DNA of 63,904 nt, counting the filler, from Octopus bimaculoides (Eukaryota), in the NCBI RefSeq assembly GCF_001194135.2. It is 6 parts of 5 records of this genome, joined end to end, with 100 filler letters (N's around TTAATTAATTAA, not from the genome) between each part and the next. Parts side by side here need not be neighbours in the genome. Positions count along the whole stretch, not along the records: positions 43,849 to 62,778 come from NC_068987.1; 5 more parts are not named here. The stretch is one strand, 5' to 3'. Within the stretch, counting starts at the first letter, position 1; the number at the start of each line of letters is the position of its first letter. The notes beneath the pieces were generated by a model. The model saw only the letters and a list, made by a program, of their open reading frames with translations. It did no database searches and was not told the DNA's origin. The translations under genes were made by a program, and so were the position numbers. Of this stretch, positions 2,265-62,778 are shown one piece after another.

Positions 2265-2289
2265 CATCGTGCTAGTTCCACAGTTCGGG

Positions 2290-2640
2290 TGTTGATCGTT
2301 CAAAGTTTACAGTTCGAGTTAGGATGTTGGATTGTGGGTTCTTAAAAGATTGTTGTTACGTTCCGTGTGGTTACTGCTGTTTGTTTCACTGTTGCAGTGT
2401 ATTCGTTTACCCATGAGGATATAACAACTTGATAGACGTTTTGATAGGAATGTTCCAGTAATATACTTTGTGACACTTGAATATGCATTCAGTGACAGGC
2501 AGATTCTGTGTGCTAATTGTAGGATAGATTGGCTCTCGAATTGCACTGTATATTGTACTAGCTATCATGTCATGCCGTTTTTTGAGGTAGTACGTTGATG
2601 ACATCTTGGAGCAGATGCTAATCACATGTGTAATATTTTC
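2290..2640 (-). mobile_element. R4/Dong-like (RLE) LINE fragment
   Basis: ISICSKMSSTYYLKKRHDMIASTIYSAIR and YYWNIPIKTSIK, homologous to the CCHC-RHD-WN region of the element at 28560-30120. Confidence 0.6.
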
Positions 2641-2739
2641 CCCAGAAATATGATATGTATGTATATATGTTTGTTTGTGTGTGCGCGTGTTATTTTAAGT
2701 TAAAGGGATATTGGGATGCATCTGTAGTCGGTTGGTACT

Positions 2740-2781
<42 letters not shown>

Positions 2782-2904
2782 GATGTAGATAGATAAATAG
2801 GTAGATACACTATTATGCACATGCATTCTTTTCGTGTCAATTGTAATATTACACGGAATGAAGGCGGTGAGCTGTCAGAATTTACGTTCTGACTGTGCGT
2901 TCTA

Positions 2905-3066
2905 AATTCTTTTACTACTCTTGGCACAAGGCCCGAAATTTTTGGAGAGGGGGCCAGTTGATTGGACTCCAGTACGCAACTGGTACTTAATTTTTTGACC
3001 CCGAAAGGATGAAAGGCAAAGTCGACCTCGGCGGAATTTGAACTCAGAACATAAAGAGAGACGAAA
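2905..3066 (-). mobile_element. SINE family A, 3' part of a copy split by the Tx1 LINE
   Basis: Core GACCCCGAAAGGATGAAAGGCAAAGTCGACCTCGGCGGAATTTGAACTCAGAAC; the sequence resumes at 8535-8580 beyond the LINE. Confidence 0.8.
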
Positions 3067-3313
3067 AACTAATTTCTTTATTGCCCCCCCCCCCCGGGGG
3101 CTAAACACAGAAATGTACAAAACAACTGATTGGGATCAGTAATGCGATATGGTTTACATATAATATGAGTTTAAAAATTACATAAAATATAAAAAATCGA
3201 ATGATATTAACAGTACATAGACAACACAAATGAAGCGATGATCAGGCCACGCTCCGACCCCACAAGCCCCGATCTATCGCTGGTATCTTTTTTGTTCTTT
3301 TTTTCCCGTCTAT

Positions 3314-6300
3314 TCACATGGTTCCTTGCACACACAGCACTCGTGCAACATGCTTCCATTTCTTTTGGAACGTACACTCCGACGGACATCTCTTCTCCAG
3401 CCACACTTTCCTTTTCAAGTGAAAAGTGAAAACTGAACGTAAATTGTAGCCAGAGATAAAGTTGCCTGTCTTAATTCCTTTTATCCTAGTCTTCCATACT
3501 GCCTCTTTCGCTATTGCTACAACCGTGAGAAAACAATTCCTACCTTCGTTTGTTAAAACTTCCGGTGGGTCAATTTTTATAATTGACTCAGTCGACGGCT
3601 GTACTCTTCCTTCGCCGGACAACAGGTGTTCAGCATAAGCCCACATTTCAGATATCTCCGGACACTGAACAATAGCGTGAGGGACGGTTTCACTGTCTCC
3701 CCCCCATCTTGGACAGGTCGGCGACTGACGCTTACCGTGTGTTGCGAGCTTATCCCAAACAGGCAAGGCACCGCTGTAGCATTGCCAGGTTAAGGACTTT
3801 TGGAAGTTGTCCAACGTTCTCAACCCGAATGTACGGTGAAACAATCTGTCCAGTTGAATGAACCCGAGACCTAGAGTCGCCCCCAGGCCATCGTCGCATT
3901 TTGNNNNNNNNNNNNNNNNNNNNNNNNNNNNNNNNNNNNNNNNNNNNNNNNNNNNNNNNNNNNNNNNNNNNNNNNNNNNNNNNNNNNNNNNNNNNNNNNN
4001 NNNNNNNNNNNNNNNNNNNNNNNNNNNNNNNNNNNNNNNNNNNNNNNNNNNNNNNNNNNNNNNNNNNNNNNNNNNNNNNNNNNNNNNNNNNNNNNNNNNN
4101 NNNNNNNNNNNNNNNNNNNNNNNNNNNNNNNNNNNNNNNNNNNNNNNNNNNNNNNNNNNNNNNNNNNNNNNNNNNNNNNNNNNNNNNNNNNNNNNNNNNN
4201 NNNNNNNNNNNNNNNNNNNNNNNNNNNNNNNNNNNNNNNNNNNNNNNNNNNNNNNNNNNNNNNNNNNNNNNNNNNNNNNNNNNNNNNNNNNNNNNNNNNN
4301 NNNNNNNNNNNNNNNNNNNNNNNNNNNNNNNNNNNNNNNNNNNNNNNNNNNNNNNNNNNNNNNNNNNNNNNNNNNNNNNNNNNNNNNNNNNNNNNNNNNN
4401 NNNNNNNNNNNNNNNNNNTCCACAAAAAGCGAAAGAGCTGTCTCACCAACCTGATCAACCACGAATCAGGAAAGGGCACGACGGCCAGGCGGTAGGTAAT
4501 GACCGATGCGATAAACACATTGGCCACCTCCGCCCTCCCTTTCAGGGATAGCCACCACCAAGACCAGGTCATGACTACTGCAGCCACCCTGCTCAATACC
4601 ACCGTCCAGTTCTTCTCTATCTGGAGGCCTGGTCCAAACCAAACTCCCAGCAACTTAGCCGGTCCCTCCGTCCTGCGCCCAACAACGCTGTCTGAAGGCA
4701 TCGACTTGCCAACCCTGGTGCCGACTTTTCCCAGTTAATCTTTGCTCCTGCCACCTCATTGTAAGCCTCAATAGTTTTACCCACTTCAAGTAGGCGTGCT
4801 ACTGAAGTAACGCCGATAGTGATATCATCCGCGTAAGCCGTAACAAACTCCTCTAGACCTGGTTCTCTCGGAATGTCACTCAACCTTCGCAGTAGGGGCT
4901 CGAGAGCCACCACATACAAAAGCGGTGAGAGCGGACATCCTTGACGAACCGAGCTTCGAAAGGAAACCGTTCACCCGAACTATCGAGTCAATATTGTGGT
5001 ACAAAGCGATAAACCACCTGAGGAAGCCAAAGCCCACGCCAAACCGCGCAAGCACAGTCGCCAGGTATCGATGGTTAATCCTATCAAAAGCTTTAGACTG
5101 GTCTAAATGCACCAATGCCCCACCTTTGCCAGATTTATTACCATCCCTCTCTATGGTGTAGCGGATAAGATGGAAGGTGTCCTGGGTGGTTCTGCCTGGG
5201 ATGGCACATGTCTGTGCCTTCCCGACTGTAATATTCGCGACACGTGCCAACGTTTTCGCTAAGACCTTGGTCAAAATTTTCACTTCTGCGTTTAACACAG
5301 TGATAGGACTGAAATTCTCTATAACGTCCCCCTTGTCCGGGTCCTTTCTGACCAACGTCAAGTCCCGGCGACCTACCCGCTTTACAGTCGGCCAAAGCCT
5401 CCATCACCTCCCCAGGCGTGATTGGCTCCTGGCGAGATTCCGCATCCGACCCCGAGAGACACGGCAGACCGGCAAGATAGTCCTCGAGGGTTATCCCACC
5501 ACCAGGACCACCGTCACCCCCGAACAGCTGGGCGAAGTGCTTCCGAAAGGCCTCACACATTTCCTCGAGTTCGTTTACCAAGACGCCATTATGATTCGTC
5601 AAAGACCGTATAGTGGAACTATTTCCCTGCCAAGCTTCCACCATTCGGGCCCATCCAGCGGCCTTGATTCCTTCTCTTCCCATCGCACGTAACTTGGCTC
5701 TGGCAATACTTCCCATGTGTTGGGCTTCAAGATGCTGGTTTAACTCCAGTCTTTTCACCTTCGCTTGGTCCGCATTACCAGTCCTCCAGGCTTCTTCTAG
5801 TTCCTTAACTAAATCATCTATTCTACGTCCCTTCTTAGCTAAACTTATGCTAAACCTAATAGACTCATATTTGATGGCTCTTTTTAGGGCATATCAGCAT
5901 TTGTTATTAATGATGGTACCTGTCAATGTCCTCTGCATTAACATCTTGATCCGCTTTCTGTATTCCTCAATCATCAAAAAGGACGTATTGAGTTTCCAGT
6001 AGCCATATCCCTGACTAAGTAACTTTTGTCAGTTTACAGGTAACCATTTTGTGGTCACTGTAGCTGACAAGAAAAAACTGTGGACACTTAGCTATGGGCA
6101 TATCTGTTTCTCTAATTAAAATCCTATCTAGATATGTTCTAGAAGACCCGTCACTATTTGACCACGTCCACTGTGGAGTGTTCGGGTGTTCCAACCTATA
6201 TGGATCTGCTAGCTGAAAGTGACTTAGCAGATCCCGTAAGCCTGGATTACCTTTTCTGTTCGTGTTCGAGCCAACACGATCTGTGTGTGCCTCACATATT

Positions 6301-6727
6301 GTGTTAAAGTCTTCTAACAATACTAGCGAATGCGACGTGACCAGGAACTTGCCCAAGTCACGAAATTATTCACTTTGCGGACCCATAATGTTGTGTGCAT
6401 AAATAGCAACTAGCCTGATTATCTTGCCACAACTGAATGTCAGGTCGAGAACGACCAGCTTGCCTTCTGGATCAGAAGAACAAACTTTTTGTCGGCTACC
6501 CGGTTTCTTTTTAGTAGGACCAACACTCCACCCCACCTCCCGCCCGACTCGGAGAAACGTATTTCTCATAGCCGTTCAGGAGGGGGGACAGATCTTTTGA
6601 CCCCTTTACCCGGGTTTCCGTTGCAACAATCACATCCAATTTTCTTGACCTGATGACATTTAGGAAGCGTCCTTGCTTCCAGTTAGACATCAGGCCACGA
6701 ACATTTATACAACTAATGTGAATAGAT
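3314..6727 (-). pseudogene. Tx1 ORF2: APE endonuclease and reverse transcriptase (disrupted)
   Basis: ISCINVRGL..LDVIVATETR, LVAIYAHN, LLEDFN, SRTYLDRIL, SDHKMV (APE); SPGLD, FSPITVLNAEVKIL, LDQSKAFDRINH, YADDITI (RT); CPRWGGDSETVPHAIVQC. Several stops and frameshifts; gap at 3904-4417. Confidence 0.85.
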
Positions 6728-6739
6728 ATGACTTAGCTC

Positions 6740-8396
6740 TTAATCAGGGCTGTCCGGTGGAGAGGGGTTCTCCACCTTTTCTTGATACAGGGTCGGAGGT
6801 GGCAGGTCTTGGGAAATAGATTTGTTAAAATCCCGTCTCATTACCGACACAGAATAATCAGCTGGAGGGGGTGGGAGATCCACCTTTTCCTTTTCTCGCA
6901 GGATCGGGACTGGTAACCCATTAAATATAGACTTATTAAAGTCCAGTTTCATCGATGATACTGTCTTACGATATTTGTTTTGTAAAATTCTATGAGTCTT
7001 ATTTGAGACTTCATACACGTCATAATTGTTGTATTTCTCCGAANNNNNNNNNNACGTCATAATTGTTGTATTTCTCCGAAAGGTTATCTATTTTTTTGCA
7101 GTCTTAATTAATTGAATGTCTCTCATTAGTTCAGTATCTTTACTATATACGGCTATTATGCCTTTTCCTCTTTTTCTCTTCTAGCAGTCTTTTTTGGTCG
7201 TTGTTCTGTAGTAGTCACTGCTCTCGGTTGAGTTGCTGATTGTATTTTTCTTTTGTTTGTTGTTTTCTTCTCATCTTTTTCTTATTTTTCTTCTTCTTCC
7301 TCTTTTTCTTCTTTCTCCTCTTCCTCCTCTTCCTCATTTTCCTTGCAGTTTCTTCGAATGTGGCCTAATTGGCCACACAAAAAACATCGGGCTTTTCGGC
7401 CCTCAACAAACGCCACGAGGGTCTCCTCCCCTATCTAAATCGTCTCGGGAATTTCTTCAATTATTTTAGAGTCAGCCTGGATGAGGAGACTAACTGTTTG
7501 GTCAGTCCAGTTAGCGTTTTCGGTAGCGGCAGCCTGGAGGAGGGTAATTTTCTCTTCCTGTTTGATTAGGACTGCCGCCACCAACCACATAGGATCCACT
7601 TCCGGTGGGACCCTTGTGATTTTAATTCTGGACGTTCTCATCCCCATACAGGTGGGGATGAGCGCCACGTCGTCCGTTTTCAGTGTTTCTACTGAATGTT
7701 TTTGTGCTATTTCTTTGTTGGTAAACCTTACTTCCACCGTACCAAACTTCCTGCCTCTTGTCAGATAAACTACGTCGCTCCAAATTGGCTTTAGGCACTT
7801 CTCTATCTTCTCTTCTGTAAATCTTTCAATTTTTCTTCTTTGCAAACACTAAGTTTTAAATACAAATACAATTGTCTTCTGTTTTTCTTCTAGTATTAAT
7901 TGCTCCGGTGGTTGTATTTTAATCACGTTATCATTTATTTCCATCATTTCACTATATTTCATAAAGTCACACTTGTTCGTCGAAAGCAGCCGGGTTCCAC
8001 CCCCAGCTGCCAACGCAAAACTTTTTTTTTCCTTTTTTTGGTTGCTCAGCCTGGATGCTAGGTGCATCAATTATTCTTTTGGACACAATACCTTTTTATG
8101 GCAAACTCTGGTAATCTTCTTGTGAAAGTTCTGACGAGCTTTCAGACACATCTCTAAATATCTCATACATTTTGTTATACTTCTTTTGCAACGGGGGAAT
8201 CAAAAATTCCTTCTTCGGGGTAATCCATTATTTCCTTGCTCATAGTTGGCTCCTCGCCAAACGACATGAAATTCTTCGCTTCAACAGGCATAATATACAT
8301 TTCTGTTCCAACGGTAGGCCTCTCGCTAGACGACATTCTTCCACCCAACGGGGGAATGAACAACGCGTACTTTCTACAAGCACTTAGTGTTTTCAA
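6740..8396 (-). pseudogene. Tx1 ORF1 (disrupted) with CCHC zinc knuckle
   Basis: RRM-like GRKFGTVEVRF..RIKITRVPPEV; knuckle CFLCGQLGHIRRNC at 7345-7386; acidic/basic tract and Pro-rich C-terminus. Confidence 0.75.
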
Positions 8397-8534
8397 ATGA
8401 ACACTCCAACAGCTACGAAATTCAAAAAATTAACAAACGGCAGTTATTAGAAACAGCAGTTATTATAAATAATAACACCAAGTAACAGCAATTTTTACCA
8501 ACACATGTGCGACGCGTAACAAACAAAACTCACG

Positions 8535-8580: not shown

Positions 8581-8813
8581 TATTTCTTTATTGCCCACAA
8601 GGGGCTAAACATAGAGGGGACAAACAAGGACAGACAAAGGGATTAAGTCAATTACATCAACCCCAGTGTGCAACTGGTACTTATTTAATCGACCCCGAAA
8701 GGATGAAAGGCAAAGTCGACCTCGGTGGAATTTGAACTCAGAACGTAACGGCAGACGAAATGCCGCTAAGCATTTCGCCCGGCGTGCTAAGGTTCCTGCC
8801 AGCTCACCGCCTT
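8581..8813 (-). mobile_element. SINE family A, Tx1-tailed subfamily
   Basis: tRNA-like head with B-box GAGTTCAAATTCC, family A core, tail TTTGTCCCCTCTATGTTTAGCCCCTTGTGGGCAATAAAGAAATA; very similar to 58344-58576. Confidence 0.8.
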
Positions 8814-50126: not shown

Positions 50127-51099
50127 ATATATATATATATATATGTATTCCAAAAATAGGTATATGAATATAAATTCAACAGCTCTAAAACAGTAGAATG
50201 TGATTGGAAAAGGATTTGGTTCCCATATCTAGCAAGACGTGCGGCCATTTGTTAATGATGGGAGTATTATAGTAGAATTAGTGCTTCCCAAATGTTCTAG
50301 ATATTTTTATGGGTATATTCAGTCAAGACAGATATTAACATTTTATACATTATTGTTAAGCAGGTTATGGGTCTATAATATTTTGGTTCATTTGTTTCTT
50401 CATTTTTTTGGAAGTAGGAATGTTACATCATTAACTAGCCAAGAGGGAATCATACTAGGTTGCTGCAAAACATTATTGTAAAGTTTTGTTAGCAGTTCAT
50501 GGCTCTCTGGGAAGGTATTCAACCAGAAGTTAGGAATTTTATCCTTTTATTATTATTATTATTATTATTATTGTTATTATTGGACAAACAGCAATAATAA
50601 TATTAAGATCTTATACGAATAGATTAATTTATAGGACTGTAGATAGAAGTAACGTAAGTTGTACACAATCCAAAGTTGTCGGCAACTCAGACCACAAATT
50701 TGTAAACTTTTCAGTCGACTTAGGGCCCATGGGCAAGGCCTCGGATATCGGAAGCTGAAGGTTTCAAGCATTTAGAGACCGCGTCAAGCAGTCAGAGACC
50801 GGATTAGAAAGTTAGACCATCGGAAATTGTCAGGGGCAATCGTCAACAACAAATGATAGTTAACAATTGTCAACAACAAATGGTATGACCCGAGGTGGGA
50901 GACACCATCGAAAACAAGTTCTCAAATGCCTTCCCCAACAGCAGCCATACCACCACCGTCAACAACAACATCATCCCCATTACTACATCACCACTACCAC
51001 TATCACAGACACCACCGTCACAAGCACAACCCAATTCATACACAAATTTCAGATCACACATCTCAACACAAAATTCGCACAAATTTACTTGTGAGGTTT

Positions 51100-51480
51100 G
51101 TTCCAGCTCTTTAAGTTCTGATTTCAAATCCCATCGCGATCAGCATTGCCTTTCTGGGGTCAATAAAATAAAGTACTAATAAAATATTGAGATAAATTTA
51201 ATCATCCAATGCCACCCATCAAAAATTTCGGGATGTTGCTTATACTAGAAATAATTATTATTATTCTTTTCTACTCTAAGCACAAGGCCCGAAATTTTTT
51301 GTGGAGGGAGCCAGCCGATTAGACCGACCCCAGTAAGCAACTGGTACTTAATTTATCGACCCAGAACAGATGAAAAGCAAAGTCGACCTCGGCGGAATTA
51401 GAACTCAGAACGTAAAGACAGACGAAATACCGGTAAGCATTTCGCTCGGCGTGAAACGTTTCTGCCAGCTCACCACCTTA
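51100..51480. mobile_element. Tail-to-tail SINE A pair sharing an (ATT)n tract
   Basis: Decayed plus-strand copy 51100-51255; well-preserved minus-strand copy 51262-51480. Confidence 0.8.
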
Positions 51481-52617
51481 AACAATTATTATTATTATTA
51501 TTATTATTAATGTTGTTGTTGTTGTTGTTGTTGTTATTATTATTATTATCACGTACTTATACTTGAGACTTGTTAGAAAGTGGAACAATTTTTCTTTTTT
51601 TAAATAGCACAGTTCTTGAAAATCATTGTATCTACGGATTAATATGCAGAACTGTATGGACGTTATAAATAAAAAAAAGACTTATAATGCATTATAAGTC
51701 TGCTAAATGCATTATTAAGTCTGTTATAATTGATATGCTGAAAATTTTTGCTTTTAAATCACACAATTAATTGAAGGCGATAATTATCTATCAACAAATA
51801 TGGATTGATGAGCTAGCTTAATTTTTCAGTATTTTTCTAATTGTTGAATAAAACATGCGCGTAGCTCTTGTGATAGCATGGGCTGAGAAACAAGCATCTG
51901 CTGATTGTCCAAGTCCACGTATAGATAAAATCATATATTTTTATCATTTAGTTTCGCTCTAAAGGAAATTTTTAGTTTATCTGTGTAAATATCTGAATAT
52001 AATAAGATGATGACTTGATGATAAACATATGAGTTTCACAACTTTATTGCTTTATAGTATTAATCGAAAGAAATAATAGAAGGGTGCACGTGAGCTGGAA
52101 GTGACCTAGTACATGACTGGTACTTAGCTGGCAGGCCTTGGAAGAAGCAAGAACAAACTTGAACCCAGAAGAACATGGACTTAGAACGAGAACGGATGTT
52201 GCTAAGTACCCCCAAAGTATCGTCAAGTACCCTCATAATTCTGCCAATTCGCCGCTTTCTCGTCTGGTAATATATTAATATCTGAGACAACCACAAGATC
52301 ATACATCTTGTGGAAAGGTTGAGTCAATTAAATCCACTTTTACAACTGGGTTTTTTTTCTTTCTTTTCTCTTCTCTGGCCAACTTAGGTGCAAGTACAGC
52401 TGAGTGGTTACGAAGTTCATTTGCATATTACGTCGTTTTGGGCGTCCATTTCATAATTTCGTATTTTTCACAAGTGTCTTTTAACATAGATTGAGCTTGA
52501 CCGATCGCTTGAGTACGATGAAAACTTTGTGGATTTCCTCGAATGGACTCTACCTATTTCAGAGGTGTAGACGCAGTCTGACGCTCGGTTTAACACTGCT
52601 GCCTACCTAACTCTTGG

Positions 52618-52993
52618 GTGGAAGTGCAATGGCCCAGTGGTTAGGGCAGCGGACTCGCGATCATAGGGTCGCGGTTTCGATTCCCAGACCGGGCGTTGTG
52701 AGTGTTTATTGAGCGAAAACGCCTAAGGCTCCACGAGGCTCCGGCAGGGGATGGTGGCGAACCCTGTTGTACTCTTCCACCACAACTTTCTCTTACTTCC
52801 TGTTTCTGTTGTGCCTGTAATTCAAAGGGTCAGCCTTGTCACACTGTGTCACTCTGAATGTCCCCGAGAACAACGTTAAGGGTATACGTGTCTGTGGAGT
52901 GCTCAGCCACTTGCACGTTAATTTCACGAGCAGGCTGTTCTGTTGATCAGATTAAATGGAACCCTCGACGGAGTGACAACAACAACAACAACA
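52618..52993 (+). mobile_element. SINE family C, full length with 13-bp TSD and (CAA)n tail
   Basis: TSD ACCTAACTCTTGG at 52605-52617 and 52994-53006; A-box TGGCCCAGTGG; B-box-like GGTTTCGATTCC. Confidence 0.9.
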
Positions 52994-53231
52994 ACCTAAC
53001 TCTTGGATTCTTTTAGCAGAGTTAATTCTGCTAAAGTTAATTTGTCTCTTCTCAACAATCTCGGACGTCATTCAAGACCATTAGGCTCTTCTGATTAAGG
53101 TATAAGAAGAAACATCGACAATAATTTCTGGATAGAGCAATAGGTTGAACTTCTTGCCTCAGTTATCCTTTCTTTAGCTCTATCGAAGAACGGAAATGAC
53201 CGCTTTGATTTCTTTTGTAATACTTAATTTG

Positions 53232-53460
53232 AAGATGGCGGCGAACTGGCAGAATCGTCAGCACGCCAGATTAAATGCTTTGCGGTTTTCCGTTTGTTCT
53301 TCATTCCGAGTTGAAATTCTGCCTGGGTCGTTTTTGCCTTTCATCATTGCGGGGTCGATTAAACAAGTACCACTTAAACACTGGGGCTGATGTAATCGAC
53401 TTACCCACTTCTACGAACTTGCTGGCCTTGTGCCAAATTTTGAAGCCAATACTTGATTTG
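53232..53460 (+). mobile_element. SINE family A
   Basis: Head GGCGGCGAACTGGCAGAATCG, core, tail GGCCTTGTGCCAAATTTTGAAGCCAATA. Confidence 0.8.
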
Positions 53461-53761
53461 AAGAAACATCAATTCCACCCCCAACCCCATGTCTCAATAT
53501 TACAAACAACGATCTTGCCAATCTGGGAGAGAACGTGAAAAGATTAGAAATTACTAACCTTTCTGCTTTCTTATTCAATAAAAAAAATGTATCCTGACGG
53601 AAATGGTAGTAAAAATATACGAAATGGAACTGCATGAAATTAAACAAGGGAAAATAATTTCGTAATCGAACTTAAACGCTGTTATTGGGAATTTATAACA
53701 CATAATAGTCTTAGTACTTGTGTTATTTAGCGTCAATGTTACCATTTATTTAAACAGATTC

Positions 53762-53920
53762 ATAAGCGCAGGCATGGCTGTGTAGCATTGAGTTTGCTTT
53801 CCAACTATATGGTTCGAGTTCACCTTGGACAAGTATCTTCTACGATAGCCTCGGGCCGACCAAAGCCTTGTGAGTTGGATTTGGAAAACGGAAACTGAAG
53901 GAAACCCGTCGTATATATAT

Positions 53921-53951
<31 letters not shown>

Positions 53952-55085
53952 NNNNNNNNNNNNNNNNNNNNNNNNNNNNNNNNNNNNNNNNNNNNNNNNN
54001 NNNNNNNNNNNNNNNNNNNNNNNNNNNNNNNNNNNNNNNNNNNNNNNNNNNNNNNNNNNNNNNNNNNNNNNNNNNNNNNNNNNNNNNNNNNNNNNNNNNN
54101 NNNNNNNNNNNNNNNNNNNNNNNNNNNNNNNNNNNNNNNNNNNNNNNNNNNNNNNNNNNNNNNNNNNNNNNNNNNNNNNNNNNNNNNNNNNNNNNNNNNN
54201 NNNNNNNNNNNNNNNNNNNNNNNNNNNNNNNNNNNNNNNNNNNNNNNNNNNNNNNNNNNNNNNNNNNNNNNNNNNNNNNNNNNNNNNNNNNNNNNNNNNN
54301 NNNNNNNNNNNNNNNNNNNNNNNNNNNNNNNNNNNNNNNNNNNNNNNNNNNNNNNNNNNNNNNNNNNNNNNNNNNNNNNNNNNNNNNNNNNNNNNNNNNN
54401 NNNNNNNNNNNNNNNNNNNNNNNNNNNNNNNNNNNNNNNNNNNNNNNNNNNNNNNNNNNNNNNNNNNNNNNNNNNNNNNNNNNNNNNNNNNNNNNNNNNN
54501 NNNNNNNNNNNNNNNNNNNNNNNNNNNNNNNNNNNNNNNNNNNNNNNNNNNNNNNNNNNNNNNNNNNNNNNNNNNNNNNNNNNNNNNNNNNNNNNNNNNN
54601 NNNNNNNNNNNNNNNNNNNNNNNNNNNNNNNNNNNNNNNNNNNNNNNNNNNNNNNNNNNNNNNNNNNNNNNNNNNNNNNNNNNNNNNNNNNNNNNNNNNN
54701 NNNNNNNNNNNNNNNNNNNNNNNNNNNNNNNNNNNNNNNNNNNNNNNNNNNNNNNNNNNNNNNNNNNNNNNNNNNNNNNNNNNNNNNNNNNNNNNNNNNN
54801 NNNNNNNNNNNNNNNNNNNNNNNNNNNNNNNNNNNNNNNNNNNNNNNNNNNNNNNNNNNNNNNNNNNNNNNNNNNNNNNNNNNNNNNNNNNNNNNNNNNN
54901 NNNNTGTCTCTCATCACTGCTTGACAGCCGGTGTGGGTTTGTTTATGTCCTCGTAACCATAACGGTTCGGCTAAAAGAGTCCGATAGAATAAGTACCAGG
55001 CTTAAAATAATAAGTACTGGGGTTGATTCACTCAACTAAAAGTGCTTCAACACGGTGTCCCAGCATGGCCGCAGTCCAATGACTG
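53762..55085 (+). mobile_element. SINE family B halves flanking a gap
   Basis: 5' half 53762-53950 ends in (TA)n; 3' half 54905-55085; may be one or two copies. Confidence 0.7.
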
Positions 55086-55115
55086 AGATTTAAAAAAAAA
55101 AAAGAGGGTTAAGGT

Positions 55116-55392
55116 GGAGGCGCAATGGCCCAGTGGTTAGGGCAGCGGACTCGCGGTCGGAGGATCGCGGTTTCGACTCGCAGACCGGGCGTTGTATGTG
55201 TTTATTGAGCGAAAATGCCTAAAGCACCACGAGGCGCCGGCAGGGGGTGGTGGCGACCTCTGTTGTACTCTTTCGCCCCAACTCTTTCTCACTCTTTCTT
55301 CCTCTTTCTTGATAAAGAGCTGCGATGGACTGGCGTCCCGTCCAGCTAGTAGGGAACACATACGCCATGGAAACTGGGAATCCGGCCCTATG
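55116..55392 (+). mobile_element. SINE family C head and body with an alternative tail
   Basis: Matches 52618 to about 52795, then CTGCGATGGACTGGCGTCCCGTCCAG...GGAAACTGGGAATCCGGCCCTATG. Confidence 0.8.
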
Positions 55393-55414
55393 CCCCACAA
55401 GGGGCTAAAAGGTA

Positions 55415-55583
55415 TTCCAGTGTATGGTTAAGCAGGTCGCTTCACAAACACATGGTTCTAGGCTCAGTCCCCCAGCATAGCCCATTGGACAAGTGACTCC
55501 TGTTATAACCCTGAACCGGCCAATGCTTTGTGTGAGAATTTGGAGGACGGAAACTGTGTGGAAACCCGTCGTATATATATATG

Positions 55584-55626
<43 letters not shown>

Positions 55627-55859
55627 CTTTATGTCGGTGGTGGGGGACAAACACCGGCACGAAGACACACACGCTTGACAACCAGTGTTGGTGTGTTTAC
55701 ATCCTTTAAATTAGAAGTTCGGCAAAAGATACTGATAGAATAAGTAGCAGGCTTGCAAAAAAAAAAAATAATAAGTACTGGGGTCGATATGTTCGACTAA
55801 AGCCCTTGAAGGTGGTGCTCCAGCATGGCCGTAGTTAAATGACTGAAACAAGTAAAAGA
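55415..55859 (+). mobile_element. SINE family B
   Basis: Decayed head, internal microsatellite, tail AAATGACTGAAACAAGTAAAAGA. Confidence 0.8.
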
Positions 55860-56550
55860 NNNNNNNNNNNNNNNNNNNNNNNNNNNNNNNNNNNNNNNNN
55901 NNNNNNNNNNNNNNNNNNNNNNNNNNNNNNNNNNNNNNNNNNNNNNNNNNNNNNNNNNNNNNNNNNNNNNNNNNNNNNNNNNNNNNNNNNNNNNNNNNNN
56001 NNNNNNNNNNNNNNNNNNNNNNNNNNNNNNNNNNNNNNNNNNNNNNNNNNNNNNNNNNNNNNNNNNNNNNNNNNNNNNNNNNNNNNNNNNNNNNNNNNNN
56101 NNNNNNNNNNNNNNNNNNNNNNNNNNNNNNNNNNNNNNNNNNNNNNNNNNNNNNNNNNNNNNNNNNNNNNNNNNNNNNNNNNNNNNNNNNNNNNNNNNNN
56201 NNNNNNNNNNNNNNNNNNNNNNNNNNNNNNNNNNNNNNNNNNNNNNNNNNNNNNNNNNNNNNNNNNNNNNNNNNNNNNNNNNNNNNNNNNNNNNNNNNNN
56301 NNNNNNNNNNNNNNNNNNNNNNNNNNNNNNNNNNNNNNNNNNNNNNNNNNNNNNNNNNNNNNNNNNNNNNNNNNNNNNNNNNNNNNNNNNNNNNNNNNNN
56401 NNNNNNNNNNNNNNNNNNNNNNNNNNNNNNNNNNNNNNNNNNNNNNNNNNNNNNNNNNNNNNNNNNNNNNNNNNNNNNNNNNNNNNNNNNNNNNNNNNNN
56501 NNNNNNNNNNNNNNNNNNNNNNNNNNNNNNNNNNNNNNNNNNNNNNNNNN

Positions 56551-56965
56551 TTTGCCGAACCGCTAGGTTACGAGGACGTAAACGCACCAGCATCGGTTGT
56601 CAAGCGATGTTGGGGTACAAACACAGACACGCAAACATATACACACACATACATATATATATACATATATACGACGGGCTTCTTTCAGTTTCCGTCTACC
56701 AAATCCACTCACAAGGCTTTGGTCGGCGCGAGGCTATAGTAGAAGACACTTGCCCAAAGTATCACGCAGTGGGACTGAACCCGGAACCATGTGGTTGGTA
56801 AGCCAGCTACTTACCACGCAGCCACTCCTGCGCCGGTTTGTTCACGTAACTTAGCAGTTTGGCAAAGAGACTGATAGAATAATTACTGGCGTCGATTTGC
56901 TCGATTAATCCCTTCAAGGCGATGCCCCAGCATGACCGCAGTCCAATGACTGAGATAAGTAAAGC
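56551..56965. mobile_element. SINE B (minus, 56551-56832) abutting a headless SINE B 3' half (plus)
   Basis: Direct match to family B segments in both orientations. Confidence 0.8.
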
Positions 56966-57131
56966 TAAAGGACACTGAGACAGCGAGTCTCCGGATAAAG
57001 TGGGATTAATTTGACATGCTTTCGTTTGATAAACAGATTCGGCCAGTGGTTGTCAGACTGATCCTACAAATATTTCTGTGTGCGTGCGTGCGTGCGTGCG
57101 TGCGTACGTGTGTGTGTGAGCATGCGCGCGC

Positions 57132-57172
<41 letters not shown>

Positions 57173-58343
57173 TGCGTGCGATTTATCATCTGTACTTAGG
57201 TGAGGGACAACTTGATGCTCCAACAATAAAAATATAAATAGATAAAATAACGAAAATGTATAACACTCNNNNNNNNNNNNNNNNNNNNNNNNNNNNNNNN
57301 NNNNNNNNNNNNNNNNNNNNNNNNNNNNNNNNNNNNNNNNNNNNNNNNNNNNNNNNNNNNNNNNNNNNNNNNNNNNNNNNNNNNNNNNNNNNNNNNNNNN
57401 NNNNNNNNNNNNNNNNNNNNNNNNNNNNNNNNNNNNNNNNNNNNNNNNNNNNNNNNNNNNNNNNNNNNNNNNNNNNNNNNNNNNNNNNNNNNNNNNNNNN
57501 NNNNNNNNNNNNNNNNNNNNNNNNNNNNNNNNNNNNNNNNNNNNNNNNNNNNNNNNNNNNNNNNNNNNNNNNNNNNNNNNNNNNNNNNNNNNNNNNNNNN
57601 NNNNNNNNNNNNNNNNNNNNNNNNNNNNNNNNNNNNNNNNNNNNNNNNNNNNNNNNNNNNNNNNNNNNNNNNNNNNNNNNNNNNNNNNNNNNNNNNNNNN
57701 NNNNNNNNNNNNNNNNNNNNNNNNNNNNNNNNNNNNNNNNNNNNNNNNNNNNNNNNNNNNNNNNNNNNNNNNNNNNNNNNNNNNNNNNNNNNNNNNNNNN
57801 NNNNNNNNNNNNNNNNNNNNNNNNNNNNNNNNNNNNNNNNNNNNNNNNNNNNNNNNNNNNNNNNNNNNNNNNNNNNNNNNNNNNNNNNNNNNNNNNNNNN
57901 NNNNNNNNNNNNNNNNNNNNNNNNNNNNNNNNNNNNNNNNNNNNNNNNNNNNNNNNNNNNNNNNNNNNNNNNNNNNNNNNNNNNNNNNNNNNNNNNNNNN
58001 NNNNNNNNNNNNNNNNNNNNNNNNNNNNNNNNNNNNNNNNNNNNNNNNNNNNNNNNNNNNNTGTGTGTGTGTGTGTGTGTGTGTGTGTGAGTGTGTTGTT
58101 AGGTGGCTGGGGTAAACGCGTCCATGCAAAGGTGTATAAGCACGTGTGTGTGAGTGCGTGCGTCCATGCATCCCTCTCTATGTGTGTGCGTCTGTGTGTG
58201 AGTGTGTAAGTGTATGTGCGTGCATGCGAACGTGAATGTGTGTGTGAGCATCTGTGTGTGTGAATGTGTGCGTGTTGTGTTTGACTACTTGTATCAAGGA
58301 AGTGCAGTGAAATGGAATGTACGAGATGTGCGTAGTTATTTCT

Positions 58344-58576
58344 TATTTCTTTATTGCCCACAAGGGGCTAAACATAGAGGGGACAAACAAGGACAGACAA
58401 AGGGATTAAGTCGATTACATCAACCCCAGTGCGTAACTGGTACTTAATTTATCGACTCTGAAAGGATGAAAGGCAAAGTTGAGCTCGGCGGAATTTGAAC
58501 TCAGAACGTAACAGCAGATGAAATACCGCTACGCATTTCGCCCGGCGTGCTAACGTTTCTGCCAGCTCGCTGCCTT
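58344..58576 (-). mobile_element. SINE family A, Tx1-tailed subfamily, with perfect 12-bp TSD
   Basis: TSD GTAGTTATTTCT at 58332-58343 and 58577-58588; same tail as 8581-8813. Confidence 0.9.
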
Positions 58577-58619
58577 GTAGTTATTTCTGCGCATGTGTGG
58601 GCGTGAGGAAAACCATGGA

Positions 58620-59050
58620 GGGTAGGAAAAGTCTTTCCTCAGGGATGCTGCTCTGAAACGAAGAGTAATGAGCTGAAGAAAAGTTCGAGAAGCTGAAAAT
58701 ACAATATAAGATAAGAATTTCTAAAAAGAGGGAAACGGCAAAATTCAAGGGATGCCAAAATAGGATTAAAAGAGTTCAAGCAAAAGATGGACATAAGACT
58801 AATGAATTACAGGTACTACTGGAATAATGAAGGATGGCTTGCAACGGTGAGAATGGAAGGCAGAAAAAAGAGCAGAGAACGGCAATCTTGGAATTCGGGA
58901 CATCAGTCACGAATGGCCTTGGGATTGCACCTAAAAGGTTACCCTCCAAGGCACAAGTCCGAGGAAGGTTGTTTGTGGAATACCAACAGTCACCCATGTA
59001 TACCAGCCTCCTCTCTCCGTGCCATTGATGTTATCCAAGGGAAAGGCAAA
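58620..59050 (+). mobile_element. Decayed RTE-like LINE 3' end
   Basis: EGRKKSRERQSW (compare RTE EGRRxRGRPRxxW) followed by a 3'-UTR-like GATGTTATCCAAGGGAAAGGC. Confidence 0.45.
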
Positions 59051-59220
59051 CGCCAATGCAGCTTGGCATCAGTGGCGTTGCAAACTCATTTCTACAGCTG
59101 AGTGAACTGGGGCAACGTGAAATAAAGTGTCTTGCTCAAGAGCACATCACAGTCCGGTTCGGGAAGCGGACTCACTATCTCAAAATTGTAAGCCCGACGC
59201 TCTAACCACTGAGGTAAGTG

Positions 59221-59225
<5 letters not shown>
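59050..59225 (-). mobile_element. CORE-type SINE
   Basis: CAGCTGAGTGAACTGGGGCAACGTGAAATAAAGTGTCTTGCTCAAGAGCAC; head ...CTCTAACCACTGAG. Confidence 0.7.
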
Positions 59226-59273
<48 letters not shown>

Positions 59274-59702
59274 GCATTTATATATATATATATAATGATA
59301 TGTAATCGTAAGATCCAAGGATCTAAGTGTAGGAAGTTAGTAAGCTTCGAGCAGTCGGTGATCGGCATAAAAAGCAACTTTCAGGAACAACAATGATTTA
59401 AAGATTTTAACTTGTATGTTATTTAATATATCTTTACTCGTTTTTCTTGTTCAAACATATTCCACAAAGCACCCTGAGTTATTTCCCTCCGCTCATATTT
59501 GTTTCATTCATTCATTCAAACATACATATATACATATATACATACATGCATGCATATATACATGTATACATACATACATACACACACATACATACATACA
59601 TAATACATACATATATGCATATATATATATATATATACATATATGCATGCATGTATATATGTGTGTGTGCGTGCGTGCGTGTGTGTGTGTATGAATATAT
59701 AT

Positions 59703-59880
59703 GTACGAGGGTGTGCTGAAAAATTCCTGGCTTTGGGTAAAAGAAAAATGCAGGAGGATCTTTTAATTAGGATTTTATTCAACTGATCCTCCTCTCAGAT
59801 TCACACACTCATTGCAGCGGTCCTTCAGTTTTTCTACACTGTGTAAAAGAACTCGGAAAGTTGGGCTTCCAGCCAGGTCT
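59703..59880 (-). mobile_element. Mariner 3'-terminal fragment
   Basis: TACGAGGGTGTGCTGAAAA TIR-type end next to a decayed C-terminal GDxVE-like coding tail. Confidence 0.55.
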
Positions 59881-60012
59881 TTCGGAGAGAGAGAGAGAGA
59901 AGTAAAGAGAGAGACGGAGAAAGAAGGAGGGAGAGAGATGGAGGAGGTGAGACAGAGAGGAGAAGGAGAGAGAGAAGGAGAGAGAGAAGGAGAGAGAGAA
60001 AGTCTTATTTTG

Positions 60013-60156
60013 CTTGCTTACCAACCACATGGTTCCGGGTTCAGTCCCACTACGTGGCATCTTGGGCAAGTGTCTTCTACTATAGCCTCGGGCCGACCAA
60101 AGCTTTGTGAGTGGATTTGGTAGACGGAAACTGAAAGAAGCCCGTCGTATATATGC

Positions 60157-60203
<47 letters not shown>

Positions 60204-60430
60204 TGTGTGTGTGTTTGTGTGTCTGTGTTTGTCCCCCTAACATTGCTTGACAACTGATGCTGGTGTGCTTATGTCCCCGTCACTTAGCGGTTCGGCAAAT
60301 AGACCGATAGAATAAGTACTAGGCTTACAAAGAATAAGTCCCGGGGTCGATTTTCTCGACTAAAGGCGGTGCTCCAGCATGGCCGCAGTCAAATGACTGA
60401 AACAAGTAAAAGAGTAAAAAAAAATAAAGA
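60013..60430 (+). mobile_element. SINE family B
   Basis: Young-looking copy with full body and (AAAAGAGT) tail. Confidence 0.9.
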
Positions 60431-60949
60431 GTAACCAAAAGTCGAACGTTTCCAACCAAATATTTACGTGCTATTCTTTATAGCTGTATAGCTGTATGTG
60501 ATGTGCTTCGAGAACCATTATTCCACCCTACACACACACACATACAATAAAAAAAATCGTATATTAACAAATCAACACGGTATTAACACTGTTATGTTGC
60601 TAACATCTGTAAACTGGATCTGACGAAAACCATGCACCAGTAATGACACATTGCGAAGCTGTTGCTTTAACTGCTATAGTTGCTTCGTTACTTTCCCAAA
60701 TGGGTGAAAGCCATTTATTCTACATTAAACCGTCCATTTAATCCAGTTAATGGTGTTATGTGTAATATCGCACTGCAGAGTGTGAAAGCTGTTTATATCG
60801 TTCAAGGTAATGTTAATATTTTGGGATGAGTTTACCCTGTCTCATCAGTTTTCTTTCATAAGTAGTGGAAGGAATCGTATGGAAACTTTGGATCCATGGT
60901 TTAAACACATCTCATTCGGAAAAACAGTCGTATTGTTTAGTAAGACTTT

Positions 60950-61344
60950 GAAAGCGCGGTGTGGCTGAGTGGTTGAGAAGCTTGCTTGCCAATCACGTTG
61001 TCTTGGGTTCAGTCCCTCTGCGCGACGCCTTCCGTAGATGTCTTCTATAGCCCTGAATCAACCAGAGGCTTCTGAGTGAATTTGATAGACGGGAACTGAA
61101 ACTTGTGTGTGTAGGCGGGTGAGTGTTTTTCCTCCACCACCACTAGACAAACGGTGACAGAAACACACCACTGGTTTAGTGTGTTTACGTCCTCGTAACT
61201 TAGCGGTTCGGCAAAAGACCGCTAGAATAAGTACCAGGCTTAAAAAATAGTACTGGAGTCGATTCATTCAAGTAAAATTTCTCCACGGTGGTGCCCCAGC
61301 ATGGTCACAGTCTAATGGCTGAAACAAGTAAAAGAGAAAAGATA

Positions 61345-61375
<31 letters not shown>

Positions 61376-61870
61376 TTACTAGGCAACACCGNNNNNNNNN
61401 NNNNNNNNNNNNNNNNNNNNNNNNNNNNNNNNNNNNNNNNNNNNNNNNNNNNNNNNNNNNNNNNNNNNNNNNNNNNNNNNNNNNNNNNNNNNNNNNNNNN
61501 NNNNNNNNNNNNNNNNNNNNNNNNNNNNNNNNNNNNNNNNNNNNNNNNNNNNNNNNNNNNNNNNNNNNNNNNNNNNNNNNNNNNNNNNNNNNNNNNNNNN
61601 NNNNNNNNNNNNNNNNNNNNNNNNNNNNNNNNNNNNNNNNNNNNNNNNNNNNNNNNNNNNNNNNNNNNNNNNNNNNNNNNNNNNNNNNNNNNNNNNNNNN
61701 NNNAGTGTGTTTACGTCCTCGTAACTTAGCGGTTCGGCAAAAGACCGCTAGAATAAGTACCAGGCTCGAAGAAATATGCTGTGACGTCGATTTGGTCGAC
61801 TAAAGCCTTCAATGCGGCGTCCTAGCATGGCCGGAGTCTAATGACTGAAACTAGTAAAATATAAAAGATA
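60950..61870 (+). mobile_element. Two further SINE B copies (60950-61340; 3' half 61705-61870)
   Basis: Family B head, body and tail motifs. Confidence 0.8.
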
Positions 61871-62477
61871 AATGTTGGGCGTAATTAAACATAGCAGCAG
61901 AGCAAAAACTATCGACGTTTATTTCAATAATTCATCATCGGAGGAACATGTCAAGAAGCTTGGAGTGACAGAAAACATGCGATTCAAATCATATCCAGAA
62001 GATTCAGAGAAGCAAAAAACAGCGAATTTAATTCAACAATTTTATACTTGATGAAGAAAATGGCACTGAACCCGAAGAAGCGAAAGGATAAATTTAAATA
62101 CCAACAAAAATATGTCGTTGACGACATATTGGATCTCTTTTCATTAATTTTTAATAAAGATGTCATCAAAGAATACATTGCTGTTGAATATGAACATTCT
62201 TCTAAAATGGCGATTTTAGCTATTAAAAAAAAATGTCGATGCTGATTTAATCAATGGAGAGATGTTAAGCCATTTTTTCTTTTTTTTTTCCATGAAACCT
62301 AATCCGGTGAATTAGCAAAGTCGACAGATCGTCGGAAATGATGCCGCATGATATTTGTTCAGACATTCTGCACTTTGACTTCAACTCTTGCTAAGGTTTA
62401 CTTTACTTTTCCAGGTCGATAAAAAGAAGGACAACTACAGGGCGGTGGACTGGCCGAGCTGTTAGAGAGTTGGACAA

Positions 62478-62778
62478 GGTATATGTTGGCACTCCGTCGC
62501 TTACGACGTCGAGGGTTCCAGTTGATCCGATCAACGGAACAGCCTGCTCGGGAAATTAACGTGCAAGTGGCTGAGCACTCCACAGACACGTGTACCCTTG
62601 ACGTAGTTCTCGGGGATATTCAGCGTGACATGGCTGACCCTTTGAATTACAGGCACAACAGAAACAGGAAGTAAGAGTGAGAGAAAGTTGTGGTGGAAGA
62701 GTACAGCAGGGTTCGCCACCATCCCCTGCCGGAGCCTCGTGGAACTTTAGGTGTTTTCGCTCAATAAACATTCACAAC
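62478..62778 (-). mobile_element. SINE family C
   Basis: Reverse complement of the 52618-52993 body and tail; head lost in gap. Confidence 0.85.

What the first reader, a model, noticed from the sequence alone, without database searches (positions are those of the whole stretch)
58332..58588. SINE subfamily with a Tx1-derived 3' tail
Seen: SINEs at 58344-58576 (12-bp TSD) and 8581-8813 end in CCTTGTTTGTCCCCTCTATGTTTAGCCCCTTGTGGGCAATAAAGAAATA. The Tx1 LINE at 372-2264 ends CCTTGTATTGTCCCCTCTTTGTTTAACACTTGTGGTTCTAATAAAA, and the Tx1 LINE at 3067-8534 ends TGTTTAGCCCCC-G12-CAATAAAGAAAT. Other family A copies (51262, 48490, 53232) have the same head and core but an unrelated GGCCTTGTGCC...(AAT)n tail. 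Known: SINEs share 3' tails with stringent partner LINEs (L2, CR1, RTE), while L1-clade partners usually need only poly(A). Inference: a SINE switched to a Tx1 partner that recognises its own 3' end.
Basis: partly seen in the sequence, partly recalled or inferred. Interest (0 to 1): 0.7.

Follow-up and report, generated by a model that had tools for sequence, protein, structure and literature searches.

The report
Octopus SINE subfamily with swapped tail
This is a real, recently inserted copy of an octopus short interspersed element (SINE) whose last 60 bases are a portable 3' module shared with other octopod mobile elements, but whether that module comes from a Tx1-type LINE could not be tested.

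Summary
The SINE is real. It is a 233-bp element on the minus strand (58344-58576) with a perfect 12-bp target-site duplication and the quoted tail. Four other family-A copies in the piece share its head and core but carry a different tail.

The piece is octopod DNA, probably Octopus bimaculoides. I found a second copy in O. bimaculoides (93% identical over core and tail; tail 61/63) and a partial one in O. vulgaris. So this is a subfamily, not a one-off chimera.

The same roughly 50-60-nt tail also ends a different octopus repeat flanked by (ATC)n, and it sits inside tRNA-like tandem units in Argonauta. It is therefore an old, portable module, as LINE-derived SINE tails are.

All family-A tails share CCTTGTG, nine bases, GAAA/GAAG, two bases, then the end. 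In the TSD-bounded copies CCTTGTG lies exactly 15 nt from the 3' end.

The Tx1 link is untested. Both cited LINEs lie outside the piece, and about 118 kb of Octopus DNA sampled (about 153 kb of cephalopod DNA in all) held no LINE with this tail. The papers searched report no SINE/Tx1 pair that shares a tail. Interest is modest.

The parts
58344..58576 (-). Focal SINE, 233 bp: head, conserved core and alternative 3' tail
   Evidence: Aligns with the other family-A copies over head and core. The boundaries are set by the 12-bp TSD.
58332..58343 (.). Target-site duplication, 3'-side copy in element orientation (GTAGTTATTTCT; AGAAATAACTAC in sense)
   Evidence: Perfect 12/12 repeat of 58577-58588. 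Its first 7 nt in sense (AGAAATA) repeat the element's last 7 nt, as expected if the nicked target annealed to the RNA 3' end (the annealing is inference).
58577..58588 (.). Target-site duplication, 5'-side copy in element orientation
58477..58576 (-). Head with A-box-like and B-box-like motifs (B-box-like GAGTTCAAATTCC at 58490-58502)
   Evidence: The motifs were read from the sequence. ARAGORN and Rfam find no tRNA, so a tRNA origin is not demonstrated here.
58407..58476 (-). Conserved family-A core (..TTTGCCTTTCATCC..GTCGATAAATTAAGTACCAGTTACGCACTGGGGTTGATGTAATCGACTTA)
   Evidence: Shared with all family-A copies in the window and in O. vulgaris and O. bimaculoides loci.
58344..58406 (-). 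Alternative 3' tail module, 63 nt: ATCCCTTTGTCTGTCCTTGTTTGTCCCCTCTATGTTTAGCCCCTTGTGGGCAATAAAGAAATA. It has AATAAA 6 nt from the end and no poly(A).
   Evidence: 61/63 identical in O. bimaculoides L005 3814-3876. Significantly similar to the tail of element D (L005 about 7013-7072) and to the Argonauta L003 repeat units, each with 0 of 3000 shuffles reaching the observed score.
58344..58365 (-). Terminal 22-nt motif CCTTGTG-N9-GAAA-N2, common to focal and ordinary family-A tails
   Evidence: The pattern is found only at family-A 3' ends: 6 hits against 0.2 expected in the first 76.7 kb, with more in later loci. End-anchored identity is 13/22, P about 0.001.
51266..51479 (-). Family-A copy with the ordinary tail; TSDs AATAATAATAATT[G/A]TTT at 51249-51265 and 51480-51496
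48491..48705 (-). Family-A copy with the ordinary tail
53236..53447 (+). Family-A copy with the ordinary tail; 17-bp TSDs (16/17) at 53219-53235 and 53448-53464
46131..46254 (+). 5'-truncated family-A copy with the ordinary tail
48742..48770 (-). Short tail-like fragment CCTTATGCTCCTGTGGCTAATAAAAAAAA directly after (CTT)n; possibly a tail-only remnant of a related element
   Evidence: The motif YTGTGG-N0-5-AATAAA occurs 3 times against 0.28 expected. The alignment to the focal tail is weak: 32 of 2000 shuffles score as high.

Best explanation
The element at 58344-58576 is a retroposed copy of a multi-copy Octopus SINE subfamily. Its head and core are those of an abundant family ('A').

Its last 60 nt or so are a distinct version of a portable 3' module that also ends, or sits within, other octopod non-autonomous elements. 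The module most likely derives from the 3' end of an autonomous LINE.

Inferred mechanism: that LINE's reverse transcriptase recognises the 3' end and starts target-primed reverse transcription there. The nicked target anneals to the terminal AGAAAUA. No poly(A) is involved.

The subfamily most likely arose by module exchange (template switch or recombination) between a family-A body and a tail from a related member of the same tail lineage. It did not jump to an unrelated partner. The clade of the partner LINE (Tx1 or other) is not established.

Shown: the TSD, the subfamily, module sharing across element families and genera, and the common terminal architecture. Inferred: LINE origin, stringent 3' recognition, and the annealing step.
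For: The copy moved as one unit:
- A perfect 12-bp TSD brackets head, core and tail.

The subfamily is real:
- O. bimaculoides L005 3814-3932 is 93.3% identical over 119 nt, with the tail 61/63.
- O. vulgaris L008 carries the tail end (28/31) joined to the family-A core.
- All focal-type copies end at ...AAAGAAATA.

The tail is shared across element families:
- Element D in O. bimaculoides, flanked by (ATC)n: alignment score 48 against a shuffle mean of 16.8 +/- 3.0.
- Argonauta tRNA-like 189-bp units: score 46 against 16.7 +/- 2.9, 40/51 identical.
- In both cases 0 of 3000 shuffles reached the observed score.
- An orphan tail end in O. vulgaris L002 is not attached to a family-A body.

The tail types share a terminus:
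- Common terminal architecture and end-anchored similarity with ordinary family-A tails.
- Head and core are 75-86% identical between copies, but the tail is only about 55-60% identical to ordinary tails. That gap argues for replacement rather than drift.

Mechanistic hints:
- 7-nt microhomology between the element's end and the start of the TSD.
- One base pair next to the CTTGT loop flips CG to GC between the tail classes.

Background: shared tails define stringent SINE/LINE pairs (PMC3472496, PMC3747384), and tail shuffling among SINE superfamilies is documented in bivalves (PMC11481361).
Against: - No LINE carrying this tail was seen in any sequence I could read, so LINE origin rests on analogy.
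- The small hairpin is not more stable than shuffled sequence. RNAalifold predicts no consensus structure. The single covarying pair may reflect one historical event.
- Local alignment of the focal tail to ordinary tails is not significant on its own. Only the end-anchored test is.
- In Argonauta the module is internal to a tandem unit rather than terminal.
- Only three focal-type copies were found, so target preference and age cannot be compared with any LINE.
Confidence: 0.7

Rival explanations
1. One reading: the tail was captured from a Tx1-clade LINE that recognises its own 3' end, and the SINE switched to it from an unrelated partner.
For: - Tail portability fits a LINE-derived module.
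- L1-Tx1 LINEs are present and recently active in Octopus: 13 families and 421 recent insertions in O. vulgaris (PMC13282606).
- A closely related tail sits on element D, which is inserted in (ATC)n. Ordinary family-A copies abut (AAT)n, (ATT)n or (ATC)n. Many Tx1-clade elements target specific sequences, including microsatellites (PMC4494074).
- AATAAA lies near the 3' end, as in Pol II-transcribed L1-clade elements.
Against: - The cited LINEs are outside the piece, and no Tx1 or L1-like reverse-transcriptase sequence was found in the Octopus DNA sampled.
- Clade assignment without tools is unreliable.
- Microsatellite targeting also occurs outside Tx1, for example Dong of the R4 clade at (TAA)n (my knowledge). 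Dong-R4 is the most active LINE group in O. vulgaris.
- The 'unrelated' premise fails.
- The three focal-type copies are not in microsatellites.
Confidence: 0.3
2. The tail derives from a LINE of another clade (Dong-R4, RTE, CR1 or similar), and family A, element D and the focal subfamily are all clients of that lineage.
For: - RTE, Dong-R4 and CR1 are the abundant or active LINE groups in octopuses.
- Ordinary tails run into (AAT)n or (ATT)n, reminiscent of (TAA)n-associated Dong (the comparison with Dong is from memory).
- The known mollusc SINE partners are CR1, CR1-Zenon, L2 and Nimb (PMC11481361).
Against: - No such LINE with this tail was seen either.
- TSDs of 12-17 bp fit endonuclease (APE)-type LINEs in general and do not discriminate between clades.
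- The one LINE found, in Argonauta L003, has an unrelated 3' UTR.
Confidence: 0.3
3. The 'tail' is not LINE-derived. It is a conserved SINE-intrinsic segment (an HCD-like domain) passed between SINE families by recombination, and mobilisation does not depend on it.
For: - The module is conserved between Octopus and Argonauta. In Argonauta it is internal to the unit.
- The first 23 nt resemble an internal segment of the CORE-type SINE B.
- No LINE with the tail was found.
Against: - In Octopus the module is always terminal, and element ends coincide to the base.
- Ordinary and focal tails keep a fixed distance from the motif to the 3' end, which suggests a function at the terminus.
Confidence: 0.12
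4. A one-off chimeric retrocopy formed by template switching from a LINE or other RNA onto a family-A RNA during a single insertion; not a subfamily.
For: In the piece alone there is only one copy. Template-switch chimeras are known for L1 (discussed in PMC4494074).
Against: Independent copies with the same junction and different flanks exist in O. bimaculoides and O. vulgaris.
Confidence: 0.03

Closest known systems
Stringent-type SINE/LINE pairs with a shared 3' tail (e.g. eel UnaSINE1/UnaL2; 58 pairs listed by Ohshima 2012, PMC3472496 and PMC3747384)
   Same: A SINE with a composite head, body and tail. The tail is a defined non-poly(A) sequence that recurs on other elements. The element ends at a fixed nucleotide and has TSDs.
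   Different: The defining partner LINE with the same tail was not observed here. The stem-loop is weak or uncertain.
SINEU mobilised by Tx1-Mar in crocodilians (Kojima 2015, PMC4494074)
   Same: The only published case in the searched library where Tx1-clade LINEs are proposed to mobilise SINEs. Target preference is part of that argument, and related octopus elements sit in microsatellites.
   Different: SINEU has snRNA heads and poly(A) tails, and no LINE shares its 3' terminus. The link there rests on shared targets and 5' heads. Here the proposed link is a shared 3' tail, with no poly(A).
L1-clade stringent pairs in plants and algae (maize/sorghum SINEs with LINE1-1_ZM; SINEX-3_CR with L1-1_CR; PMC3472496)
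   Same: They show that L1-clade LINEs can share specific 3' ends with SINEs, so a Tx1 (L1-related) stringent partner is not implausible.
   Different: Those ends finish in poly(A) and have a well-supported conserved stem-loop. They are plant or algal, not animal Tx1.
Mosaic HCD-SINEs of bivalves with several LINE partners (Martelossi et al. 2024, PMC11481361; Matetovici et al. 2016, PMC4758252)
   Same: One SINE body carries different LINE-derived tails, and homologous tails occur on different SINE superfamilies. This is the module shuffling seen here in family A, element D and the Argonauta unit.
   Different: The partners identified there are CR1, CR1-Zenon, L2 and Nimb, not Tx1. Cephalopods were not covered.
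Octopus SINEs OK, OR1 and OR2 (Ohshima & Okada 1994; cited in PMC4758252)
   Same: tRNA-type SINEs of octopus. OR2 is a CORE-SINE, like the abundant 'SINE B' of this piece.
   Different: I could not compare sequences because the paper is not held. Whether family A equals OK or OR1 is unknown.

Membership tests
SINE (short interspersed element) | Short (about 100-600 bp) non-coding element flanked by target-site duplications | tested here: met
   233 bp with a perfect 12-bp TSD. Two other family-A copies have TSDs matching at 16 of 17 positions.
SINE (short interspersed element) | Multi-copy family dispersed in the genome | tested here: met
   5 copies in the piece and more than 25 in the O. 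vulgaris and O. bimaculoides loci.
SINE (short interspersed element) | Head derived from a Pol III gene (tRNA, 5S or 7SL) with an internal promoter | tested here: inconclusive
   A- and B-box-like motifs are visible by eye, but ARAGORN and Rfam give no tRNA hit.
Focal subfamily of family A (alternative tail) | More than one independent insertion with the same core-tail junction | tested here: met
   Window 58344-58576; L005 3814-3932 (tail 61/63); L008 14780-14861.
Stringent SINE/LINE pair | The SINE's 3' tail is homologous to the 3' end of an autonomous LINE in the same genome | not testable with these tools
   There is no LINE in the piece and none with this tail in the roughly 138 kb of DNA fetched. 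No octopus DNA is held in the scannable collections.
Stringent SINE/LINE pair | Tail module shared by different SINE families (clients of one LINE lineage) | tested here: met
   Element D and the Argonauta tRNA-like unit; 0 of 3000 shuffles reach the observed score.
Stringent SINE/LINE pair | Conserved stem-loop near the 3' end | tested here: inconclusive
   A 3-4-bp GC stem flanks CTTGT, and one pair flips CG to GC. However, the minimum free energy is no better than shuffles and RNAalifold predicts nothing.
Tx1-mobilised SINE | Partner LINE's reverse transcriptase falls in the Tx1 clade | not testable with these tools
   No partner LINE sequence is available.
Tx1-mobilised SINE | Target-site preference shared with a Tx1 family | not tested
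   Only 3 focal-type insertion sites are known, and none is in a microsatellite. Related-tail elements sit in (ATC)n, (AAT)n or (ATT)n.
Relaxed (L1/Alu-type) SINE | 3' poly(A) or A-rich tail as the only requirement | tested here: not met
   All focal-type copies end ...AAAGAAATA with no poly(A).

The most novel reading that the evidence does not exclude
The portable 60-nt module is the 3' end of a Tx1-clade LINE. That LINE recognises its own tail and mobilises several octopod SINE families: family A, element D and the Argonauta tRNA-type unit. This would be the first SINE/LINE partnership defined by a shared 3' tail in the Tx1 clade. It would show that stringent 3'-end recognition exists in the animal L1/Tx1 lineage, and it would have persisted since before the Octopus-Argonauta split.
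Probability: 0.3. Interest if true: 0.5.

Novelty: new member of a known kind. Interest (0 to 1): 0.32.

Why it matters
SINEs make up a large share of octopus genomes, about 11.6% of the O. vulgaris genome (PMC13282606), yet nearly all recently active ones there are 'unclassified' and no partner LINE has been named. A tail module shared by several families gives a direct handle for finding the LINE that drives these expansions. If that LINE is Tx1, it would add a new clade to the list of stringent SINE partners. It would also bear on whether relaxed poly(A) recognition in mammalian L1 is derived. If it is another clade, the result is an ordinary, though useful, SINE/LINE pairing.

Tried and rejected
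Routes to octopus DNA:
- A protein search with the tail's antisense peptide found no candidates. It was meant to find spurious reading frames over SINE or LINE tails.
- A long six-frame 'bait' query timed out. A SINE-C bait gave nothing at E <= 0.001.
- A SINE-B peptide bait and then a representative search with P0001 did yield octopod proteins whose contigs could be fetched (L001-L010). This was the only route to octopus DNA.
- Exact scans for the tail, the family-A core and the SINE-B core in the metagenome, prokaryote-genome and viral collections all returned 0.
- Reading frames from the window were not on record.

Searches for a LINE:
That LINE has an FIDD motif and a 3' UTR unrelated to the focal tail.
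- No reverse-transcriptase-like ORF of 110 aa or more lies in L005-L008, and none was evident among frames of 85 aa or more in the piece, L001 and L002.
I did not redo it with masked letters because the expected yield was low.

RNA and structure:
- Rfam and ARAGORN found no tRNA in the head. Hits elsewhere in the piece were microsatellite noise.
- The hairpin idea was not supported by folding or by RNAalifold.
- Local alignment of focal against ordinary tails was not significant. It was replaced by the end-anchored test.

Rejected: the one-off template-switch chimera, because independent copies exist.

Literature: no prior SINE/Tx1 pair sharing a tail, and no description of octopus SINE tails, turned up in the papers searched. 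The supplement of the O. vulgaris repeat paper holds no sequences.

Full report
**Setting.** The piece (43849-62778) is AT-rich draft eukaryotic sequence with five assembly gaps. It is densely packed with SINEs and microsatellites.
- Peptides read from its commonest SINE match 'hypothetical predicted proteins' of Octopus vulgaris at 93% identity, and one of Argonauta hians.
- Later hits include Octopus bimaculoides.
- So the piece is octopod. The near-identical subfamily copy found in O. bimaculoides (below), together with the gap-ridden assembly style, makes O. bimaculoides the likely source. That is an inference.

**The observation.** The element lies on the minus strand at 58344-58576 (233 bp).
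- It is bracketed by a perfect 12-bp direct repeat: GTAGTTATTTCT at 58332-58343 and 58577-58588.
- Its sense strand ends exactly as quoted.
- The tail occurs once in the piece at up to 3 mismatches, against none expected.
- Other family-A copies are at 51266-51479(-), 48491-48705(-) and 53236-53447(+).
- These share the head and core (75-86% identity) but continue with ..GGCCTTGTGCC.. and run into AT-rich trinucleotide repeats.
- Two of them have TSDs matching at 16 of 17 positions.

**Is it a subfamily?** Only one route led to octopus DNA: proteins spuriously predicted from SINE B, followed by look-ups of the contigs that encode them.
- This gave 81 kb of O. vulgaris (L001, L002, L007, L008), 21 kb of O. 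bimaculoides (L005), 20 kb of Argonauta (L003) and a 14.5-kb contig of unknown origin.
- O. bimaculoides L005 3814-3932(-) is a 5'-truncated copy (core plus tail). It is 93.3% identical to the focal element, its tail matches 61/63, and its flanks are different.
- O. vulgaris L008 has the tail end (28/31) joined to the family-A core, within a small palindrome.
- All of these end at ...AAAGAAATA without poly(A).
- The subfamily is therefore real, and a one-off template-switch chimera is excluded.

**The tail is a portable, old module.**
- A different repeat, 'element D', is about 360 bp with a fixed 5' end and has copies in several loci. Its copy at L005 6711-7072 is flanked on both sides by (ATC)n.
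- That copy ends ACTTAAATCCCTATTGTCCTTTGTTTTATGTGCAGCCCTTGTGACCAATAACAAAATG. It aligns with the whole focal tail at score 48, against 16.8 +/- 3.0 for shuffles; 0 of 3000 shuffles reach it.
- In Argonauta, 189-bp tandem units with a tRNA-like head contain TGGCTGGTCACTTGTCTGTCTACCTCTGTGCTTGGCCCTTGTGGCCAATA. This is 40/51 identical to the focal tail, at score 46 against 16.7 +/- 2.9; again 0 of 3000.
- An orphan tail end in O. vulgaris (L002 about 7341-7362) is not attached to a family-A body.
- A weaker fragment follows (CTT)n at window 48742-48770.
- LINE-derived tails of stringent SINE/LINE pairs, and 'mosaic' SINE evolution, show this distribution (PMC3472496, PMC11481361).

**The ordinary tail is not unrelated.** I used the 3' ends that the TSDs define.
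- Focal and ordinary tails all read CCTTGTG, nine bases, GAAA or GAAG, two bases, then the end.
- CCTTGTG therefore lies exactly 15 nt from the terminus.
- End-anchored identity is 13/22 (P about 0.001), and 22/40 against 51266 (P = 5e-5).
- The two ordinary tails are also only 13/22 alike.
- MAFFT aligns the focal tail to the ordinary ones with a single 18-nt insertion.
- Unanchored local alignment is not significant.
- A short GC stem flanks CTTGT in most versions, and one pair flips CG to GC between the classes.
- Against that, folding energies are no better than shuffles and RNAalifold predicts nothing. The hairpin stays a lead only.
- Head and core are 75-86% alike, while the tail is only about 55-60% alike. 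That favours replacement by a related tail over simple drift.

**Mechanism (inferred).** The element's last 7 nt, AGAAATA, are repeated as the first 7 nt of the TSD.
- This is expected if the nicked bottom strand annealed to the RNA 3' end to prime reverse transcription.
- The fixed terminus, the absence of poly(A) and the conserved terminal motif fit a stringent partner that recognises the 3' end.

**Which LINE?** This is untested.
- No L1-like or Tx1-like reverse transcriptase was detected in about 118 kb of Octopus DNA.
- The one LINE seen, in Argonauta, has an unrelated 3' UTR.
- For Tx1: L1-Tx1 is recently active in Octopus (PMC13282606). Elements with related tails sit in microsatellites, a habit of many Tx1-clade elements (PMC4494074).
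- Against, or neutral: other clades also target microsatellites (my knowledge). Dong-R4, RTE and CR1 are at least as active in Octopus. The three focal-type copies are not in microsatellites.

**Known versus new.**
- In the library searched, SINEU/Tx1-Mar is the only proposed case of Tx1 mobilising SINEs. It explicitly lacks a shared 3' terminus.
- The mollusc partners reported are CR1, CR1-Zenon, L2 and Nimb.
- L1-clade stringent pairs are known only in plants and algae.
- What is shown here is a new member of a known kind: a mosaic SINE subfamily with a swapped tail.
- The Tx1 partnership would be a new variant, but it remains a hypothesis with probability about 0.3.

**Verdict.** Interest is modest (0.32). 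The decisive test is a genome-wide search with the tail, followed by clade placement of any LINE that carries it.

Noticed in passing
window 55391-55409 (minus strand), inside the SINE C copy at 55110-55430(+): This SINE C copy carries, on its antisense strand, the exact 19-mer TTTAGCCCCTTGTGGGGCA of the focal-type tail, matching the O. bimaculoides L005 version. Other SINE C copies read ..TATGAGCCAGCCATGGCTTCGAG.. at that place. A 19-nt exact match is far beyond chance, and I have no explanation for it.
   Followed up: partly
window 44609-44960, 47212-47690, 53775-55115, 55431-55860, 56553-56982, 59995-60430, 60954-61350, 61704-61880: These are copies of an abundant CORE-type SINE ('B') with an internal (TA)n/(TG)n microsatellite. 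Its antisense frames stay open, and they are annotated as 'hypothetical predicted proteins' in the O. vulgaris genome (P0001, P0002, P0006, P0010). They also form part of an O. bimaculoides RefSeq protein (XP_014769661.2). These are likely spurious or exonised gene models.
   Followed up: partly
L005 6711-7072 (O. bimaculoides); also L001 2415-2676, L005 21862-22341 and others: Element D is a repeat of about 360 bp with a fixed 5' end (TTTAACGTCCGCTTTCCATG), internal repeats of about 60 nt and (ATC)n on both flanks. This suggests a microsatellite-specific non-autonomous retroelement. Only the L005 copy shows the related tail.
   Followed up: partly
L003 18150-18700 (Argonauta hians): A tandem array with a 189-bp period. 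Each unit has a tRNA-like head followed by the tail-like module. It looks like a SINE turned satellite.
   Followed up: partly
L008 14780-14861 (O. vulgaris): A perfect small palindrome made of two inverted focal-type tail ends. Each is followed by a 5'-truncated ordinary family-A copy. It is either an inverted duplication or an assembly artefact.
   Followed up: no
window 51249-51265/51480-51496 and the 3' flanks of most ordinary family-A copies in L001, L002, L005, L007 and L008: Ordinary family-A copies are almost always followed by (AAT)n, (ATT)n or (ATC)n, and often preceded by (ATT)n, (GTT)n or (ATC)n. Either they insert preferentially into such microsatellites or they seed them. The three focal-type copies do not show this.
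   Followed up: partly
window 58344-58406 (tail nt 5-27) versus SINE B internal segments, e.g. 47466-47490 and 60215-60240: The first 23 nt of the focal tail (TTTGTCTGTCCTTGTTTGTCCCC) resemble the segment of SINE B just after its microsatellite (..TGTGTCTGTGTTTGTCCCCC..). This could be low-complexity coincidence or another shared module.
   Followed up: no
window 46554-47163, 53952-54904, 55860-56550, 57269-58061, 61392-61703: All five assembly gaps abut microsatellites or SINE B copies. This is typical of short-read assemblies breaking in repeats, so SINE copies at the gap edges are truncated artificially.
   Followed up: no
L003 about 600-3710 (Argonauta hians): A degraded LINE with a reverse transcriptase (FDYQKAFDSIPH ... 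FIDDIKLY) and several frameshifts, followed by (CATA)n. Its clade was not determined and its 3' UTR is unrelated to the focal tail.
   Followed up: partly
L007 4540-7257 (O. vulgaris): An intronless 905-aa C2H2 zinc-finger gene with about 20 fingers, probably part of the octopus zinc-finger expansion. It has no Pfam entry on record in the look-up.
   Followed up: no
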